Assembly (NCBI GenBank): GCA_051530055.1
Contig: CM121341.1
Span: 13,556,784 to 13,620,783 of the forward strand
Source: Neoechinorhynchus agilis
Taxonomy: Eukaryota > Animalia > Acanthocephala
Length of the DNA stretch: 64,000 nucleotides
Direction: 5' to 3'
Part shown: positions 34,101 to 47,910 of the stretch, piece after piece
How positions within the stretch are numbered: position 1 is the first letter of the stretch
Layout: each line of letters opens with the position of its first letter
Position numbers and translations under genes: made by a program
The notes under the pieces: model-generated
Told to the model about the DNA's origin: nothing
Databases searched by the model: none
What the model saw: only the letters and a program-made list of their open reading frames with translations

Positions 34101-35142
34101 AATTTCCATTATTACTTTTTCAAACGAAAGTTATAAAAAGCTCGATAAAACTTACGTTTGAGCATAGGTCAAAACTTTGAAGCTACACGAATCTTAAAAA
34201 TGATTTCTGCCGTTGATTCTTAAGCTTCATTAAATATGAGTACAAGCACTTTTTCCATCGCGGAATAGTTGTTTCGCTTACTAACGTGTTTTTCGGCATG
34301 CAGACTTACGAATTGAAACGTGACTCTTAATTATGCGATATGAGAGACACTCACTGTATATCACTGAGACTATTGTCTCCTTCGGCAAACCCATTATCCG
34401 TTGATTTTAATAGGCATTCCGTTTTCACACTAATTCTATTGAAAATTCGTTTCTGTACTTCGGAGCGAGTACTCGACTTGGATTCTAATAACCACTTCAA
34501 GCGAAATCGAATATTGACTTATAATTAAATTGTTCACTCGACCAACCGTACTAATCCTTGAGTTCTGATCAATGCTTTTCGAGATATTTATTTTTCAAGA
34601 TCTTCGTCTTCAAACCTTTGGAAAATAATAGACAATTTAATCAATAATCACAACCTAAAAGTGTTTCTTATTCCGTTTTACATGAATCATTACAGAATTG
34701 GAACCTTCAAAATATGAAATTCAAGATTATTTGTTCATGTTTCTCAACGTCGCCACTAAAAAATCAACTAGTAGTGCCTCATCGTTTTGTTTCATTCAAG
34801 CAATATTTTTGACTATGCCAACAATTGTTTAATCTAAATCTTTTTAGCTGAAAAGAGCTGTAGTCCATATTTAGATACCATCAATATATGGGGATAATTT
34901 TTTAAAAGTAAATGACAGAAAATTACTCCAGTCCTGGTGTTTGTTTAATAGTAAAAACTAAGAATGTTGTAACTCCTATCCGATTTCGGGGAATGATTAC
35001 AAGGCTTTTCTAGAGAGGCAATTCGACCGTTAAGAAGCGAGTTCAGAATAAAAGCATCTTTAAGACTTTAATTTGATTATCGGAATGCTACTATTTAAAA
35101 AGTCAAATTAATCTTTTTGTGGAAAGTATATAAACGTTTTAG

Positions 35143-37839
35143 ATGCCTAAAATCTTAGTCATCTGTGATCAATTGCCGATAAAGGTTGAACAATACGATT
35201 CAAACACTGATTCACCACATGAAAAGTTCAAAATCGATCGAACAAGTGCTGGTCCAGCTGTTCCATTTCGAAGTCTTCATGATTATGATGTCGTATTTAT
35301 TGGTTCCATAAACATTATGGTGGAAGACGAAGACGATCAAAAGCAATTGGCAGACCTTTTGGCACACGAAAAGATGATGCCTGTATTTTTGACTCAATCG
35401 GAATATCAAGCATTCCACAATGGATTCGCTAAGCGGACAATTTGGCCTCATTTTCACTACTTTACTCAGATAACCACATACACTGACTCAAAATACGAAG
35501 AATATTACGGATTTAATCGCCGTTTTTACGATGTAATCCTCCGTAACTGCATAAACGATGACCAAGCTCAGTACATCTGGATTCACGACTACCATTTTCT
35601 ACTTTTGCCGAAAATGCTAAGAAAAAAAATAGACCACGTTGGAATCGGATTTTTCCTTCATATTCCATTTCCATCCTACGAAGTGTTCAGAACTCTTCCA
35701 TGGAGGAAAGATCTCCTTTTCGGCATACTCGGTGCTGATTACGTTGCTTTTAATACAAACGCATACCTTGAACACTTCCTTGAAACGGTGAAACAAATAT
35801 GTGGAATACGGTCGGTCAACAGTCGAATTCCAATAGGGAATCGAGTTGTTTCAGTCGGTTTCTATCCCATGGGTATTGATTATGATCTCTACGCTGGACT
35901 CGATAAATCCATAAACAATCACTGACATTTTGATTTCAATAGAACGCGAGGTCTTAAAGTGAATATCGAGATCAATGTCATGTGAAGTACAACCATGCTG
36001 TCTTGGTCCTGATTGGAGTCTAAGCGGTTTAAACGAAAATGGTGCTAGGACAATCCTATCGATCCAAAGTCTCGATTACACAAAGGGAATAAAGCAACAA
36101 TTGAAAGCTTATCAACATTTCCTTGAAGAGTTTCCTCAATATAAAGGACTGATAACTCTCGTTCTGATTGTATTGCCCGCTGTTCATTTTATTTCCGAAT
36201 ATAAGAGCCTTAAAGAGGATATCGAAATTACCGTGACTAAAGTTAATTCTAAAGTTGGCGGTGTTCATTGGTCGGCTATTCATTACATAACAAGACCCTT
36301 CGATATTTCTGAGATAATTACTTTGTATCGAGAAACTGACATTTGTCTTTGTATGCCATTGCGCGATGGCATCAATTTAAGAGCTAAGGAGTTTGTAGCG
36401 TCGAAGCATGAAATGAATCGTGGAGTTCTCATACTAAGTGAAATGAGTGGGTCAGCTGAACAGATGGAGGATGCGTTGGTTGTAAATCCAAACGATAGAA
36501 CCGAAACGGCTAACGCTTTTTTCAATGCAGTTCAGATGAGCGAAGATGAACAGATTACGAAACTGAGAGCTTTGCAAGAAAATGTGAGACTCTATGATGC
36601 CCACAAATGGGCTTCCATGATTATGAGGGGATTGCAAGAAGCAATAGATAATAATAAAACAAATAAATCGTTTCAGCTGACAAATGAATCGATTCTCCAA
36701 GAAATGGTTGAGAATTTCAAGCGTGCACATAGGCGGTTGCTACTTCTGAAATACGATGGAACTTTGGTGGCACTCAGTAGAAATCCTGACGACGGCAGTC
36801 CCGATATGTGGCTAAAATCCAATCTGAGGAAACTTTGTAGTGATCCCAGAAATCAAGTAGTCGTTGTCAGCGGTACGCTCACGGTAATCACATGTCGCAA
36901 TCTGAAATAACGTGTCAGAATTATTATTATACCTATAAAAGTATCACATAGAATCTCATTTTATAGCAAAACCGGTTGGGTTTTGTACTTATTCTTTGAC
37001 AAACAATTTTATGAACTAATATGAAAGTTATCATCGAAATAGAAATATATTTCTTTAGTTAAATACAGTTGAGTGTCACTTTGCTCATTCTCATAATATT
37101 CACTGGGTTGCAATTTTTTTATTACAGCTAACCGTAAGGCGCTATAATCGATGAAATATTGATATTATTTATTTAATAACTTTTGTGATTGTTGTGACTT
37201 AGAGACAAGAGCACATTGAATGAATGGCTCGGTTCTGAACCTAACCTCGACTTGGCCGGCGAGGACGGCGTTTGGATTAGGGTAGAAGACGTTTGGAATT
37301 GTGCTGTTAATAATACAGACTACGTGGACGTTGAAAAATGGAAAGAGGAAGTGAGGGAGCTCCTTGAGAAGCTATGTTCATCTACTCCAGGAACCCGGAT
37401 TGAAGAACGGGCCTTCGCACTTTTATGGCACTATCGTGGAGTGGAACGAGATTCGGTGAATATGCGGTTGCGAAATTTTGATTCAAAATTGAAACGCCTA
37501 GCAAAAAAGTACGACCTTCAATGCGTGAGAGGAAACAACTTAATAGAGATTCGACCCAGTAGTATTAAAAAAGGACATGCTGCGATAAAGTGGTTAAGGG
37601 CGCTGAATGCTAAAGAAGCCGCTAATGCAATTACGGGACTCCAGTGGGATTTTATTTTGGCTATAGGAGACGACTCGACTGATGAGGACACCTTTGAGGT
37701 TGTAAATGCGGCTGACCGAACTGCTTATACGGTTAAAGTTGGCGGGTTTGGTGGCGGTGAGCACACTGCTGCTCGGTTTGCACTTTCTAACGTTGCGCGA
37801 GTTCGGTGTGTGATTGAGACGCTTATTAATTCGGGTTAG
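35143..37839 (+). CDS. Fused trehalose-6-phosphate synthase (GT20)/phosphatase (HAD-IIB) of bacterial type, spliced, with catalytic residues substituted
   Basis: WIHDYH, GFFLHIPFPSYEVFRTLPWR, PMGIDY, LDYTKGI, LRDGINLRAKE, ILSEMSG, NPND, YDGTL, TPG..IEE...L.WHYR, GDDSTDEDTF, YTVKVG. Coding blocks 35143-~35896, ~36020-36872 and ~37205-37839; the junctions are only partly resolved. Confidence 0.9.
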
Positions 37840-38919
37840 GGAGAATCGATTGAATAAGATATCTGTTGAATGATAGTTATCGACACGTCTGGATGTAATG
37901 ATTCAAAATGGATTCTTTAATGCCAGGAAAAGCTTCAGGCGAAACCCAGATAATCACATTTAAAATATTGATTTTTTAAAGTGAGCTGACAAATTTTGTC
38001 TATTTCAAAACTTTGTAGTAATTAAAATGAATGATGCCGCAGCAAATGATTTCATTCAAAATCAGCTATCTTGAAAATAACAAAGATATCGTTGATTTAA
38101 AAACCCCTCATCCTCACGATGACGAAGGAGGATCATAGCCAATAGGTGTAAACGGAGAAGAGGGTGGCATACGACCACCCATTGTTTTAAGGATCCTATT
38201 ATCCTTTGTTGAGAGAGAGCAATTGCTCTCAAATTTTGGGTCACGCCCAAATAATGGCACGTTTTATTTGAACCAGGGAAAATACAAGCCAAAGAACCAT
38301 GAACCTCAGATATCTAGTGAAACTTCTATGGATTTCTAGGGATTATTTGTGTTTTTAATGTTTCATCTTTGCTGCCCCAAAACGTTGAGTTGTTAGGTTG
38401 TTGTTTTCCGCTCCTTCATCCAAAACGATTCGCAGATATCGCCCAACAATAAGAGTTCCTTCCAAAGTCAAAATCATTAATCGATAACCGAGAAGAATAT
38501 TTATCCTATCCTACAAAATCATGGCCGTTCACAATCAAATTTTCTAGCTATGGGCGTTTTCTTTCCAAAACGACGGTATTTAAAAGATTGATAATCTGAC
38601 TTACTACGCTGGAGCGATGAGAATATATTTGACCAGCTATAACCGGTTGGCAAACCTTCGATACTTCTCGAAGTCGAAGCTTCTAAACGGTATTTACGCA
38701 TTCTTATCAGTATCCTAGAAACTCCAATGTCTTGTATTGATGTTCAATTGCCGGATCAAATTTATCTTAAACTCCAGAAAATTGGGTTAACCAATATCGA
38801 TAGCGACGGTGGAGCAATCCACATAAATACGCGATCAATTGTGTACTGAATCATCATGTGCCTTTTAATTAGTTTGAAATTCGTTTTTTTATTAAAGTCG
38901 GGTAGTGCACAATTTGATT

Positions 38920-44096: not shown

Positions 44097-47000
44097 TCAA
44101 GGACGGTCACCAAAAAGTTTATCCGTTTCCTTTTTGATAGTTTGAGCCTCCTTGATGATTTCTTCGAGTTCCTTAGTGTAGGTATTAACGAGGTTACTGG
44201 TGAACCGCGCTCTATTGATATGATCATATCCCATTCCGCCCAGTGACTGGAATCGTTTACTGAGGATTTGGCACATTTGTATAACAGAATCAGACCAGCA
44301 TTTTGATTTAGGAAGCGTTTGTACAGGATCGATGTCTTTTAGGCTTTCACAGAATTTAAGATTGTTTCCGGTTGAAATGAACGTTAAGCCACCACCGACG
44401 AATTCAGCACCTTTATTTGATTTCAAAGACAACTTAAATGCATGTCGAAGGCGGTCATAGAGGCCATCATATATTGTACCATACGCTGAATGTGGATCTA
44501 ATGCAAACGGCTTTCTTTAAAGATCATTATCGAAAACGTTTGCCTCTGTATGATAGTTCTAGATTCCGTTAGAAGCCTTACAAGAGCGTATGAAACATTT
44601 CTTTTCTCTCTAAAAGTCCTCTGATGGCAATCAAAAAAAGCGACTATTCCATTTTCACCCATGAACAAACTCTGTATTATCATCAGACTGAGAGCCTTTT
44701 GAAGACGGTCGATAATTTTAAGAATATCATCGGGCGAGTACTTGCAAAGTAGCACACTGGTGAGATGTATAACATCAAACACGAATCTTTGTTCACGCAC
44801 TTTTCCAAATGAACGTTCATTTCCTACAGAAATCCGTGTTAGTCTTCTACACAGATGGGAGTATATTTTTTTGACGAGAGCCTCGTCCAAATGTGAATAA
44901 AGGACACACTCACAGAATAGAATAGCGTCGTGTTCAGTGGGTCGCGATGAGAATAGTTTTTGAAACATTGGTATGATCAAGCCCTCTGTTGATGGCATTT
45001 GGATTTGGGAATTAGGAAGAGAAGCTTGCTGAGCTAAAGCACATAATGTTGTCACACAAGCACCGCGATTAGCTGCAACGTCCATCAGGGAACCGCAAAT
45101 TTTTTGTTGTCGTTTTGTCAATTCAATATCCACTCCCAAAACACGAGTGGCAAGAAGAGCCAAAAGTTGAAGCGAATACGGCACAAAGTCAACTATGTCT
45201 TCGTCGATTATTTTTAACAAAAGCAAAACCAAGTCAGTAAGGTTCGTGATGTGATCGCTGTATGAACCGACGATTAGCGCTAAAATCTCGAATGCGTAAT
45301 GATTGAACAATGGCTTTCGAATGTTCGTTATACTGTTCTCAATGAGAGCCGTCATACTCGCAGTGATTCGAACGTGGAGCATTTGAGTGGCCGGTAGTTC
45401 CGTTTGACAGGTGACGCTGCATCGAAGTAAAGCTTTGAGTGCGTACTCGTTAGCAGATAAACTCTTGAGAAATTTTTGGAATTGCAGGAATACGTAAAAA
45501 CACAAATCAAATATTGCTACTACAAAGCAATGAGCATTTTTTGAAATTGCCACCAAAAGTGCGCGACTCGTTGATTAAAAGAAAAAATGTTTTAAAGAGT
45601 AGGACTAAGGTGCGGTTTTTGGGTATGATCAAGATTAACATTTCCGAAGAACGGTTAGCGCCAAAATTAATTATTTAAGCCCTATTTTCGGTTTAATTAA
45701 AGTCAAAATCAAGAGTTCATCCTTTATCAGGTTTCCGTTCGCTTGCGCAAATTAGCGCCACCACGAGATCAGATAAGAATGGGCTAATCTCGTCCACAGT
45801 GAAAAGGACCTTTTCAGTTGTCTCAAGAGGCGATGAAGTCATCGCCAACAGACGTTCAAGAGTATGGCACGCCGCAGCCGAGAGAGCGTAAGAAACAGAA
45901 ACCGAACTGACGTTGGGACTTATGAGCCGGATCAAATAAGGCATTGATTCAAGGAGAAGTGGTTTTCCAAGGATATATCTGAATTCGGCCAGATATTTCA
46001 TAGCATCCATTTTAAGAATAGGATTTGGATCCACGGAGCATTCCGTGACCAAATGGGTCTTTAGAGATTCTGTGAAAAATCTAGGGATATCGATTGATGT
46101 TGATGCGCGCACTACTCCATGTTTGGCAGTTTGTCCCCTTCGTGCAATACAAATCACAAGAAAGGTGGCAACGTCTTTTTGTTTCCAATTGACAGAAGAT
46201 TGATTGTATTCAGTGAGAAGAGCCTCAACGTACTGACCAAAGACTCCAATGACCTGTGCCTCCATTTTATGACAAAAAGCATCAATGAGTCTAGCAGCAC
46301 AACCTCGTATAGAATCAGTGTCAGTTGCTGAAGACATCTCGAATTCCTTTTTGATTAAATCTTCAACGTTTTCATCTAAAAGATCTTCGTCCCGTGGCAC
46401 AATACATGGGATTATGACGTTCTCGCAGATATTCCTTAATGCTCCTTCCTCACTCATTGCAGCAGCAAATGTATCATAGGCGGCAACATCGGTTAAGAAT
46501 TTCAGAGCTGCGCAAATCATCTGCTCATGAATGCTGCTCATAAATTCATTCAAAATCACCGTCGCATTTGATAAGGCCTTCCATACAGCATCTATACATG
46601 CGCGGGCGTATTGGATAAATTCCTGGTAGTTACGGACCAATAAGCCGGCACAATTGCATGTTGCGATTAAGGCCTCTTCTATTTCGTCAATATTGTCAAG
46701 ATTTGAATTCGGGTTAAGACCCAGCACGACCAGAAATCCTTTAGAGTATGTATCGAGGTTATCCTCGACGTGGTCTAGTGCAAAGACTCGAGAACAATTT
46801 TAGGCTAACAATTATAAAAAGTATTTTGGCGATATGCGATCCAGCAGCTTCCTGTTGCAGCGAATCAGCGCGGCGATCCAACGCGGCAATGCCGCGGCCA
46901 TCAAGGAAGCTGCCGAACAAACATAACATTTGAAGAAAACGAAACTATATTGACAGGATAGAATATTTTTGCGAGCAATGGAAAACTAAGAAAACCTGAG

Positions 47001-47910
47001 ATATCCATTTTTAGCAGCCAGTGACGTCATTTTATCATGTACACATTCAAAAACTATCGAAATTTCAATCCGACTTTTAAAGGATTGCTCGTAGATCAAC
47101 AAGCAAAGATAGATCCCGAACCCACAGGAGCCAATTTTGCGAAAATACCGAAATTGAATAAATTAATTCGATTATAAAAGTAAATGCCACTTCTTTAAGA
47201 AAACACCAATATCGAATTATTGATTCTCGAATCGTGCTTACAAGGTCTTGTGAAACCAAACTTTGCAAAATATCCATGCAAAGCGTAACGAAATTTAGTA
47301 GCTTTACATCCGCGCCTTGTCCTGTCGCGCTCAATTGCTCAATACATTTTTGATACATTTCGAGAAACTTCGGGGCGAAAGTATCGATTACAAGTCGAAT
47401 TTCACTCCAAACCTCTTCACATCTTTCAGCGCTTCTATATTTTCGAAATACATTGTCAAGAATGCTAAAAACGGCCACTGGGTCATTTGTTATTTGTTCA
47501 CTAAGTTCCTGGATCATATTGGGCCACTCAATTGGAAAGTCCGCAGACGCAATCAAAGATAAGCATACAATCAACTGATTTTGACTTGGGCTAGAAACTT
47601 GATCCAAAAGCTTGATAAGGGCTTTTCTAATAGATTCCTTTTGATCGGAACCAATCACCCCTGTAACGTCGTCCTCGCGAATTCCCTGCCATGATCGATT
47701 TACGTAATTTTTTAGGCAAATGGCGGCAGCCAAGCCAACGTTATCGCTTTTTTCGGCAATTACCTTAAGCAAATGGATACCATAGTCCGGCAGCAATTCG
47801 GCTTCCTTCAATGCATCGGTTGCTTGTTTAACGAAAACGGGATTACCGGATATTGAAAGAGCCAATTGTTCGCTAATCGCCTCTTGTTCAGCTTGCGAAC
47901 GAGTAATCAT
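44097..47910 (-). CDS. CSE1L: Exportin-2 (CAS/Cse1), multi-exon; the start may lie at about 47954
   Basis: IBN_N motif AAAICLKNYVNRSW, DFPIEWPNM, TDTDSIRGCA, NWKQKDVATFL...RGQTAKHGV, LKMDAMKY..FR, NEYALKALLR. Confidence 0.9.

What the first reader, a model, noticed from the sequence alone, without database searches (positions are those of the whole stretch)
35143..37839. Bacterial-type fused TPS-TPP gene domesticated with spliceosomal introns
Seen: a GT20 plus HAD fusion among ordinary animal genes, with a GT-AG intron of about 330 nt and host-like base composition. Known: the motifs FPSYEVFRxLPWR, ILSEMxG, NPND, TPGxxIEE..WHYR, DFILAIGDDxTDEDxF and YTVKVG match prokaryotic (Bacteroidetes-like) bifunctional TPSP proteins rather than insect Tps1 (FPPWDIFRLFPW, SPFAGA) or fungal and plant enzymes (SEFAG). 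Horizontally acquired trehalose genes have been reported in desiccation-tolerant tardigrades and rotifers. Inference: an old horizontal transfer.
Basis: partly seen in the sequence, partly recalled or inferred. Interest (0 to 1): 0.8.

Follow-up and report, generated by a model that had tools for sequence, protein, structure and literature searches.

The report
Bacterial trehalose gene in thorny-headed worm
A fused trehalose synthase-phosphatase gene that thorny-headed worms took long ago from Bacteroidota bacteria sits in this animal chromosome. This copy is expressed and kept intact, has lost its catalytic residues, and carries two newly gained introns that lack the usual GT-AG ends.

Summary
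The window is from chromosome CM121341.1 of the acanthocephalan Neoechinorhynchus agilis. At 35143-37839 (+) lies one GT20 + trehalose-phosphatase gene (764 aa). The published annotation splits it into two models.

The horizontal transfer holds. Four acanthocephalan TPS-TPP genes form one clade (100/100). That clade is sister to Saprospiria-type Bacteroidota (100/100) and lies far from the arthropod or 'pan-metazoan' clade. Forcing it together with that clade is rejected (p-AU 2e-6). The gene lies among animal genes, has host-like GC, and has relatives in Pomphorhynchus laevis.

- **Introns.** RNA-like contigs from four runs show two introns, 35912-35987 (76 nt) and 36874-37199 (326 nt). Neither is GT-AG. 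Both have TA repeated at each boundary and ends that base-pair. Earlier agents of this scan reported this intron class elsewhere in this genome. The mRNA also carries a 5' leader not encoded in the window, and a poly(A) tail.
- **Catalysis.** This copy has lost key residues (E. coli OtsA R9, Y76, R262 and R300, and the phosphatase nucleophile Asp). Its paralogue ACOME3_002138 keeps them all. The reading frame is clearly under selection, so this is a pseudoenzyme, not a pseudogene.

I found no paper that reports this transfer.

The parts
35138..35142 (+). Splice acceptor (TTTAG) ending exactly at the start codon. This is where a 5' leader not encoded in the window is joined.
   Evidence: Contigs of all four runs begin at 35143. 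X3 and X4 carry 21 extra 5' letters that are absent from the window even with 3 mismatches allowed.
35143..35911 (+). Exon 1: N-terminal half of the GT20 (trehalose-6-P synthase-like) domain, starting at the ATG at 35143.
   Evidence: Pfam GT20 E 6e-59. RNA-like contigs cover 35143-35911. Published as a separate 260-aa gene model.
35912..35987 (+). Intron 1, 76 nt, non-GT-AG. The possible registers are TA..AG, AA..GT and AA..TA. TA is repeated at both boundaries and the ends pair.
   Evidence: Joint 35911>35988 in all four runs. Fold and end-duplex energy -14.7 kcal/mol, against a random mean of -6.3; 24 of 2000 random pairs are as low.
35988..36873 (+). Exon 2: C-terminal half of GT20, the linker, and the start of the phosphatase domain with KYDGT in place of DYDGT.
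   Evidence: Pfam, PDB alignments, RNA-like contigs.
36874..37199 (+). Intron 2, 326 nt, non-GT-AG. The possible registers are TA..CT, AC..TT and CG..TA. TA is repeated at both boundaries, and a 14-bp terminal stem forms (TCACGGTAATCACA with TGTGATTGTTGTGA). It splits the Gly-Arg codons of the SGR motif.
   Evidence: Joint 36873>37200 in four runs at depth 108-349, against an intron-retaining contig at depth 5-14. End duplex -15.5 kcal/mol; 14 of 2000 random pairs are as low. The junction restores VVVVSGRDK.
37200..37839 (+). Exon 3: rest of the trehalose-phosphatase-like HAD domain, with stop codon TAG at 37837-37839.
   Evidence: Pfam Trehalose_PPase E 3e-32. RNA-like contigs.
37840..37870 (+). 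Short 3' UTR, ending at the poly(A) addition site at about 37870 (one contig runs to 37875).
   Evidence: Loose end of 25 A behind 37870 in X1. Contigs end at 37840-37875.

Best explanation
This is one gene of Neoechinorhynchus agilis, published as ACOME3_003187 plus the neighbouring 260-aa model. It encodes a 764-aa fused TPS-TPP protein.

Origin (shown by phylogeny): its ancestor was a bifunctional trehalose-6-phosphate synthase/phosphatase of a Saprospiria-like Bacteroidota bacterium. It was transferred once into the acanthocephalan lineage before Eoacanthocephala and Palaeacanthocephala split. It then duplicated.

Domestication (shown): the gene sits on a 19.4-Mb chromosome among animal genes. 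It is transcribed, its mRNA begins with a short leader not encoded in the window, joined at an AG|ATG acceptor, and it is polyadenylated.

Introns (removal from the transcripts shown; origin inferred): after the N. agilis-specific duplication this copy gained two introns. These are cut out exactly in the RNA contigs, yet lack GT-AG ends. Each has a TA direct repeat at its boundaries and base-paired ends, which is the signature of a TA-targeting foldback insertion.

Function (inferred): this copy has replaced the arginines that hold the phosphates of glucose-6-P and UDP-glucose, part of the glycine loop, and the phosphatase nucleophile. It therefore most likely makes no trehalose. Its frame has been kept by selection, so it most likely acts as a non-catalytic partner or sugar-binding regulator of the active paralogue ACOME3_002138. 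Yeast Tsl1/Tps3 and plant class II TPS proteins work in that way.
For: - **Identity.** P0001 is KAL7676937.1 of N. agilis, on a contig of 19,375,080 bases.
- **Nearest relatives.** After the acanthocephalan proteins, every top hit among 5.8 billion proteins is a Bacteroidota bifunctional TPS/TPP at 38-46% identity. The best named genomes are Phaeodactylibacter and Saprospiraceae.
- **Careful ML tree** (LG+C20+F+G4 PMSF, 43 rows). Acanthocephalan clade 100/100. Sister to Saprospiria-type sequences 100/100. Nested in Bacteroidota 100/98. Arthropod clade separate 100/100.
- **Other trees.** The same placement appears in an 84-row quick tree, a 52-row focused tree (97*), and separate TPS (98*) and TPP (97*) trees.
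- **AU test.** Joining the acanthocephalan and pan-metazoan clades costs 89.6 lnL; p 2e-6.
- **Similarity scores.** Best bacterial hit 556 bits (40% identity), best arthropod hit 308 bits (29%).
- **Intron history.** P. laevis GJ496_002947 is intronless, and the paralogue lacks both of this gene's introns.
- **Transcript.** Joints, leader, poly(A) tail, and no contigs just outside the gene.
- **Lost residues.** The query keeps 68 of 86 near-invariant columns; the paralogue keeps 83. The changes include R10Q, G36A, Y92H, R284S, R322V and D511K.
- **Selection.** 25-33 stop codons are expected under neutral drift and none is seen. Codon-position distances are 0.39/0.30/0.64.
Against: - Loss of catalysis is inferred from sequence only; no assay was done.
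- The runs are labelled 'RNA?' by guess. All four come from one study. No DNA run of the same worms was laid, so an insertion polymorphism at the DNA level is not formally excluded. The 2-5% intron-retaining contig in all four samples argues for pre-mRNA.
- Neither intron has other copies in the window, so the transposon origin is inferred from the TA repeat and the stem alone.
- Nothing shows an interaction with the paralogue.
- The trees lack named fungal, plant, nematode, bdelloid and tardigrade sequences. The AU test used LG+G4, because the test under the mixture model did not finish.
- Rotifer genomes could not be searched, so the transfer could be older than the acanthocephalans.
Confidence: 0.8

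Rival explanations
1. [quoted passage not shown] On this view, its likeness to bacteria comes from long-branch effects.
For: The monogonont rotifer Brachionus carries a pan-metazoan TPS-TPP (PMC8277472). The query has a long branch, about 1.0 changes per site.
Against: The slowly evolving paralogue (branch 0.29) and P. laevis GJ496_002947 (0.47) give the same placement. Support is 100/100 under a site-heterogeneous model. The AU test gives p 2e-6. The signature motifs match Bacteroidota, not arthropods. The score gap is 248-346 bits.
Confidence: 0.03
2. It is bacterial contamination or a chimeric assembly, not part of the worm genome.
For: The closest non-acanthocephalan relatives are all bacterial.
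Against: - It lies 13.6 Mb into a 19.4-Mb chromosome-scale contig, with animal genes on both sides (nearest called genes about 3.5-4 kb away).
- GC content is host-like.
- Two introns are removed in the RNA contigs, and the transcript has a 5' leader and a poly(A) tail.
- It is only 38-40% identical to any bacterium.
- Related genes exist in a separately assembled acanthocephalan, P. laevis.
Confidence: 0.01
3. This copy is a still-transcribed pseudogene that is decaying after duplication and has no function.
For: It has lost residues needed for both activities. Its branch is three times longer than the paralogue's.
Against: The frame is open over 764 codons where neutral drift would give 25-33 stops (0 of 300 simulations had none). 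Second codon positions change least. Both introns are removed in frame. Most structural motifs are kept: 68 of 86 near-invariant columns. The spliced contigs have high word depth in four samples.
Confidence: 0.08
4. This copy is still an active enzyme with altered chemistry, for example a different sugar acceptor or donor, or a phosphatase that uses another nucleophile.
For: The equivalents of H154, K267, D361 and E369 are kept. So are HAD motifs II-IV (SGR, GDDSTDED).
Against: All three phosphate-binding arginines (equivalents of R9, R262, R300) and Y76 are replaced. The HAD nucleophile Asp is replaced by Lys; in established HAD chemistry this Asp forms the phospho-enzyme intermediate. These columns are 95-100% conserved across 80 bacterial and animal sequences.
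Confidence: 0.08

Closest known systems
Bifunctional TPS/TPP (OtsA-OtsB fusion) of Bacteroidota, Saprospiria type (Phaeodactylibacter, Saprospiraceae, Lewinella, Haliscomenobacter)
   Same: Same GT20 + HAD phosphatase architecture and similar length (about 725 aa against 764). It is the sister group in all trees. Motif states are shared: FPSYE.FR.LPWR, LSEMAG, NPxD, GDDxTDEDxF.
   Different: Only 38-40% identical. Now an animal nuclear gene with introns, a 5' leader and a poly(A) tail. Catalytic arginines and the phosphatase nucleophile are replaced.
TPS-TPP of the tardigrade Ramazzottius varieornatus, reported as a transfer from a Solitalea-like sphingobacterium (Hara et al. 2021, PMC8277472)
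   Same: A Bacteroidota fused TPS-TPP gene captured by an animal lineage.
   Different: The recipient is Acanthocephala, a gut parasite and not an anhydrobiote. The donor lineage appears different, Saprospiria-like rather than Sphingobacteriia. The tardigrade sequence was not in my trees, so independence is inferred from the donor clades only.
[quoted passage not shown]
   Same: Same two-domain architecture and the same pathway.
   Different: 29-31% identity. A separate clade at 100/100, and monophyly is rejected. The motifs differ: FPPWDIFRLFPW, LSPFAG, NPYE, YNGCCN.
Bdelloid rotifer TPS genes (Hespeels et al. 2015, PMC4498783)
   Same: Trehalose-synthesis genes of foreign origin within the rotifer-acanthocephalan group.
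   Different: The bdelloid genes lack a TPP domain and group with plant, fungal and protist proteins, not with Bacteroidota. They are therefore a different acquisition. Bdelloid sequences were not placed in my trees.
Non-catalytic TPS-TPP paralogues: yeast Tsl1/Tps3 and plant class II TPS (named from my own knowledge)
   Same: Full-length TPS-like plus TPP-like proteins that have lost catalytic residues but are kept by selection, next to an active paralogue.
   Different: An independent origin, inside a transferred gene family. No complex or regulatory role has been shown here.
Hairpin-closed non-canonical introns with boundary direct repeats: Amoebophrya introner elements (PMC7789003). Non-canonical introns of Fritillaria and other tunicates (PMC13326754).
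   Same: No GT-AG ends, a short direct repeat overlapping both boundaries, inverted repeats that pair the intron ends, and exact removal from RNA.
   Different: Here the direct repeat is the 2-nt TA, against 3-5 nt in Amoebophrya. No repeated family copies were found in this window. The host is an animal of the rotifer-acanthocephalan group.

Membership tests
GT20 trehalose-6-phosphate synthase (OtsA/Tps1) | Pfam PF00982 match above the gathering score over the full domain | tested here: met
   200.4 and 185.7 bits against a cut-off of 32.5, covering profile positions 3-249 and 273-472.
GT20 trehalose-6-phosphate synthase (OtsA/Tps1) | Substrate-binding and catalytic residues (E. coli OtsA R9, G21/G22, Y76, H154, R262, K267, R300, D361, E369) | tested here: not met
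   R9>Q, G21>A (and the next L>P), Y76>H, R262>S, R300>V. H154, K267, D361 and E369 are kept. E. coli numbering follows the literature, from my own knowledge, and was mapped through the PDB alignment.
HAD-type trehalose-6-phosphate phosphatase (PF02358) | Pfam match above the gathering score | tested here: met
   33.3 and 112.1 bits against a cut-off of 27. Aligns to solved fungal Tps2 phosphatase domains at E 8e-33.
HAD-type trehalose-6-phosphate phosphatase (PF02358) | Motif I DxDGT with the nucleophile aspartate | tested here: not met
   KYDGT instead of DYDGT. That column is 99% Asp in 80 other sequences.
HAD-type trehalose-6-phosphate phosphatase (PF02358) | Motifs II and IV (SGR, GDDxTDED) | tested here: met
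   VVVVSGR, which is read correctly only with the RNA-defined junction, and GDDSTDEDTF.
Bacteroidota (Saprospiria-type) bifunctional TPS-TPP lineage | Falls inside or sister to that clade in ML trees, for both domains | tested here: met
   100/100 for the full length. TPS 98* and TPP 97*. 97* in the focused tree.
Pan-metazoan TPS-TPP (arthropod Tps1 type) | Monophyly with arthropod sequences | tested here: not met
   The AU test rejects it: p 2e-6, delta lnL 89.6. The motifs differ.
Horizontally transferred gene fixed in an animal genome | Physical linkage to host genes, host-type mRNA processing, and presence in related host species | tested here: met
   Neighbours on a 19.4-Mb contig. Introns, 5' leader and poly(A) tail. 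Related genes in P. laevis, plus an unnamed fragment 70% identical to the paralogue.
Hairpin-closed non-GT-AG introns (the class noted by earlier agents in this genome; Amoebophrya-like) | Exact removal from RNA with no GT-AG, GC-AG or AT-AC ends in any allowed register | tested here: met
   Joints 35911>35988 and 36873>37200, each with a 2-nt ambiguity, in four runs.
Hairpin-closed non-GT-AG introns (the class noted by earlier agents in this genome; Amoebophrya-like) | Direct repeat across both boundaries, and ends that base-pair | tested here: met
   TA at both boundaries of both introns. End duplexes of -14.7 and -15.5 kcal/mol; 24 and 14 of 2000 random pairs are as low.
Hairpin-closed non-GT-AG introns (the class noted by earlier agents in this genome; Amoebophrya-like) | The insert stays in the DNA of the same animals, so removal happens in RNA and is not a DNA excision or polymorphism | not tested
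   Indirect support: an intron-2-retaining contig at 2-5% depth in all four samples.
Transposon-derived introns (MITE or introner families) | Other copies of the same element elsewhere | tested here: not met
   No matches longer than 16 nt to either intron in the 64-kb window or in the paralogue locus. The whole genome could not be searched.
Spliced-leader trans-spliced mRNA | A leader not encoded nearby, joined at a 3' splice acceptor; the same leader on unrelated mRNAs | tested here: inconclusive
   A 21-nt leader is joined at TTTAG|ATG and is absent from the window. Whether other mRNAs carry it was not tested here. Earlier notes report leaders on other genes.

The most novel reading that the evidence does not exclude
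A gene that arrived without introns from a bacterium gives a clean time zero. The P. laevis relative GJ496_002947 is intronless, and the sister paralogue lacks both inserts. So the two TA-flanked, hairpin-closed, non-GT-AG introns of this copy must be gains made in the N. agilis lineage after the duplication. On this reading the class arises from TA-targeting foldback insertions into coding sequence, which the worm then removes exactly at the RNA level. That would be a datable case of intron birth by insertion in an animal. On the same reading, the transferred family has split into active, half-active and fully non-catalytic members that work together.
Probability: 0.45. Interest if true: 0.75.

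Novelty: new member of a known kind. Interest (0 to 1): 0.6.

Why it matters
- **A third origin in one animal group.** Within rotifers plus acanthocephalans, trehalose-synthesis genes would now have three separate origins. Brachionus has the pan-metazoan type. Bdelloids have a type derived from other eukaryotes. Acanthocephalans have a type derived from Bacteroidota.
- **It weakens a published link.** Hara et al. 2021 tie captured TPS-TPP genes to desiccation tolerance. The recipient here is a gut parasite.
- **A genetic basis for old biochemistry.** Classical work, which I recall and could not cite from the library, found trehalose in acanthocephalans. These genes offer a basis for it.
- **A possible drug target.** The active paralogues are bacterial-type enzymes with no vertebrate counterpart. 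That is of interest for parasites that are aquaculture pests.
- **Annotation.** The published N. agilis gene models miss non-canonical introns. Here that gave a split gene and a wrong junction inside the SGR motif.
- **Intron evolution.** Transferred genes can serve as natural markers for dating intron gain.

Tried and rejected
- **GT-AG reading of the first gap.** GT at 35873 and AG at 35969 give 97 nt, in phase. Rejected because it would delete the conserved GIDYDxYA block, and the RNA contigs show a different joint.
- **Annotated GT-AG intron 36884-37209.** Rejected by the RNA contigs, and because it destroys the SGR motif.
- **AU test under the mixture model on 84 rows.** It did not finish in three runs. 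Replaced by 37 rows under LG+G4.
- **Naming metagenomic relatives.** The listing of cluster members mostly returned no organism names. Organisms came from the search for related loci instead.
- **The protein-atlas search.** It gave only family-level neighbours and nothing on origin.
- **Other copies of the introns.** None were found in the window or in the paralogue locus.
- **Literature.** Searches found no paper on acanthocephalan trehalose genes as transfers, and no open paper on trehalose in Moniliformis.
- **dN/dS between the paralogues.** Not attempted, because third positions are saturated (p-distance 0.64). A neutral stop-codon simulation was used instead.
- **Structure prediction.** Not run. 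The Pfam and PDB alignments already cover both domains.
Full report
**What is there**

Three + strand ORF pieces lie at 35143-35925, 35975-36910 and 37216-37839. In order, they carry the N-terminal half of Pfam Glyco_transf_20 (E 6e-59), then its C-terminal half (E 2e-54) with the start of Trehalose_PPase, and then the rest of Trehalose_PPase (E 3e-32). An exhaustive HMMER search found an identical 512-aa protein. This is KAL7676937.1, 'hypothetical protein ACOME3_003187' of Neoechinorhynchus agilis, on a contig of 19,375,080 bases. The locus is chromosome CM121341.1 of assembly GCA_051530055.1. There the published annotation calls two genes, a 260-aa GT20 fragment (my exon 1) and the 512-aa protein. 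The called neighbours are animal genes: a Pygopus-type PHD protein, an EF-hand protein, PPP1R21 and exportin CSE1.

**The transcript**

Four public runs from one study hold 92-93% of the sampled words of the stretch. When laid on 34700-38300, their contigs cover 35143 to about 37870. Just outside that range there are no contigs, and further out only a few at very low depth. One contig ends in 25 A behind 37870. Two contigs carry 21 extra letters in front of 35143, which follows a TTTAG acceptor. I therefore treat the runs as RNA. That leader is not in the window, even with three mismatches allowed.

Two joints appear in all four runs: 35911>35988 (skipping 76 nt) and 36873>37200 (skipping 326 nt). 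Each has a 2-nt ambiguity. No allowed register gives GT-AG, GC-AG or AT-AC ends.

- Both introns have TA at each boundary.
- Both have ends that pair: -14.7 and -15.5 kcal/mol, against a mean of -6.3 (sd 3.0) for random pairs of 25-mers from the window. Only 24 and 14 of 2000 random pairs are as low.
- An intron-2-retaining contig is present in every sample at depth 5-14, against 108-349 for the joined form. That looks like pre-mRNA.

Joining the exons gives an uninterrupted 2295-nt CDS of 764 codons. The real second junction reads VVVVSG|RDKSTLNEW, which restores the family's invariant SGR motif. The annotated GT-AG intron (36884-37209, also 326 nt) gives SGTLTSTLNEW instead.

Earlier agents of this scan described this intron class on other DNA of the same genome. 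I used that as a lead and tested it here on this gene. The anatomy matches the hairpin-plus-direct-repeat introns of Amoebophrya (PMC7789003).

**Origin**

- **Database hits.** With the 512-aa protein as query, the best hit is a paralogue on the same chromosome, 4.55 Mb away (ACOME3_002138, 831 aa, 45% identity). All the next hits are Bacteroidota bifunctional TPS/TPP at 37-41% identity. With the paralogue as query, P. laevis GJ496_002947 comes first (48%). Then come more than 100 bacterial or metagenomic proteins at 43-46%, among them Lewinella, Neolewinella and Haliscomenobacter-type proteins.
- **Named genomes.** A scan of one genome per prokaryotic species put Phaeodactylibacter and Saprospiraceae on top.
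- **Arthropod comparison set.** Arthropod Tps1 proteins were fetched through the ostracod protein P0082.
- **Careful ML tree** (LG+C20+F+G4 PMSF, 43 rows). The four acanthocephalan proteins form a clade (100/100). It is sister to six Saprospiria-type sequences (100/100). Both lie inside a Bacteroidota clade (100/98). The arthropod group is a separate clade (100/100).
- **Other trees.** An 84-row tree, a 52-row focused tree, and separate TPS and TPP trees agree.
- **AU test.** Forcing the acanthocephalans together with the pan-metazoan clade costs 89.6 log-likelihood units; p-AU 2e-6 (LG+G4, 37 rows).
- **Scores.** At a fixed database size, the best bacterial hit scores 556 bits and the best arthropod hit 308. 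This gives an alien-index-like value of about 256.
- **Direction.** The acanthocephalan clade is nested several nodes deep among bacteria, so the transfer went from bacterium to animal.
- **Timing.** The gene is present in both N. agilis (Eoacanthocephala) and P. laevis (Palaeacanthocephala), so the transfer predates their split. In the TPP tree a third P. laevis gene (GJ496_008704) joins the same group. An unnamed UniParc fragment is 70% identical to the paralogue.
- **Composition.** GC is host-like: CDS 41.6%, GC3 38.3%, window 38.7%.

**Intron history**

P. laevis GJ496_002947 is a single exon. The body of GJ496_010909 is also one exon. The N. agilis paralogue has only one annotated 67-nt intron, at a different place (residue 650). 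The two N. agilis copies are sisters (100/97). Both introns of this gene were therefore gained after that duplication. At the intron-2 site the spliced codons read GGT|AGA, and the relatives have no TA there. Neither intron has other copies in the window.

**Is this copy an enzyme?**

I took the 86 alignment columns that are at least 93% conserved among 80 bacterial, arthropod and other TPS-TPP sequences.

| Protein | Conserved columns kept (of 86) |
|---|---|
| This copy (ACOME3_003187) | 68 |
| N. agilis paralogue (ACOME3_002138) | 83 |
| P. laevis GJ496_002947 | 81 |

The losses in this copy include R10Q, G36A, L38P, Y92H, R284S and R322V. Through the PDB alignments these map to E. coli OtsA R9, the glycine loop, Y76, R262 and R300. 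The loss D511K removes the HAD nucleophile, giving KYDGT for DYDGT. The equivalents of H154, K267, D361 and E369 remain, and so do the SGR and GDDSTDED motifs.

The frame is nonetheless under selection. Neutral mutation of the paralogue CDS to half or three quarters of the observed divergence gives 25-33 stop codons. None of 300 runs had zero stops. Codon-position distances are 0.39/0.30/0.64.

I conclude that this is an expressed, selected, non-catalytic TPS-TPP paralogue. A regulatory or scaffolding role beside the intact paralogue is my inference, by analogy with yeast Tsl1/Tps3 and plant class II TPS (from my own knowledge). The P. laevis paralogues show complementary decay. GJ496_010909 keeps the TPS motifs and has degenerate TPP motifs. 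GJ496_008704 is the reverse.

**What is known**

- Hara et al. 2021 describe the pan-metazoan clade (which includes Brachionus), bdelloid TPS genes of eukaryotic origin, and a Ramazzottius TPS-TPP close to a sphingobacterium (PMC8277472).
- Hespeels et al. 2015 describe the bdelloid case (PMC4498783).
- The P. laevis genome paper counts 1,729 transfer candidates but does not mention trehalose (PMC7310846).
- The N. agilis transcriptome paper mentions none of trehalose, transfer, introns or trans-splicing (PMC12690905).
- A P. laevis expression study lists 'Trehalose-6-phosphate synthase 1' without comment on its origin (PMC9153150).

As far as the held library shows, this transfer has not been reported.

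**Limits**

- The runs are contigs, come from one study, and are labelled RNA only by guess.
- No DNA run was laid.
- The trees lack named fungal, plant, nematode, bdelloid and tardigrade sequences.
- Rotifer genomes could not be searched.
- No biochemical test was possible.

Noticed in passing
window 35143 (5' end of the mRNA): The 21-nt leader on contigs X3 and X4 (ATATTTAAAAACTTACAAGCA) shares the core AACTTAC-AAG with the 23-nt rotifer spliced leader GGCTTATTACAACTTACCAAGAG (PMC3795323, Table 1). The acanthocephalan leader may be homologous to the rotifer one.
   Followed up: partly
window about 44097-45355 and 45717-47839 (- strand): Exportin-2/CSE1 is annotated as two adjacent genes on the same strand, CAS_CSE1 (361 aa) and IBN_N/Cse1 (616 aa). 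This may be another gene model broken by a non-canonical intron.
   Followed up: no
L083:6001-8337, L084:11835-14057, and protein P0139 (P. laevis): The three P. laevis TPS-TPP genes show complementary decay. GJ496_002947 is intact and intronless. GJ496_010909 has intact TPS motifs and degenerate TPP motifs (DYDKSL, TTFR). GJ496_008704 has degenerate TPS motifs and intact TPP motifs.
   Followed up: partly
L082:9953-10019 (N. agilis paralogue ACOME3_002138): The paralogue's single annotated 67-nt GT-AG intron also has pairing ends (-12.8 kcal/mol). Its true boundaries were not checked against RNA.
   Followed up: no
L084:6001-6296: The annotated 57-residue N-terminal extension of P. laevis GJ496_010909 comes from exons 5.5 kb upstream. 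It precedes an internal Met that aligns with the bacterial start (MTRIIIVSNRLP), so it may be an annotation artefact.
   Followed up: no
protein P0002 (UniParc UPI00079FA69A, 361 aa): An unnamed fragment, 70% identical to the intact N. agilis paralogue and with all catalytic motifs. It is probably from a third acanthocephalan species.
   Followed up: partly
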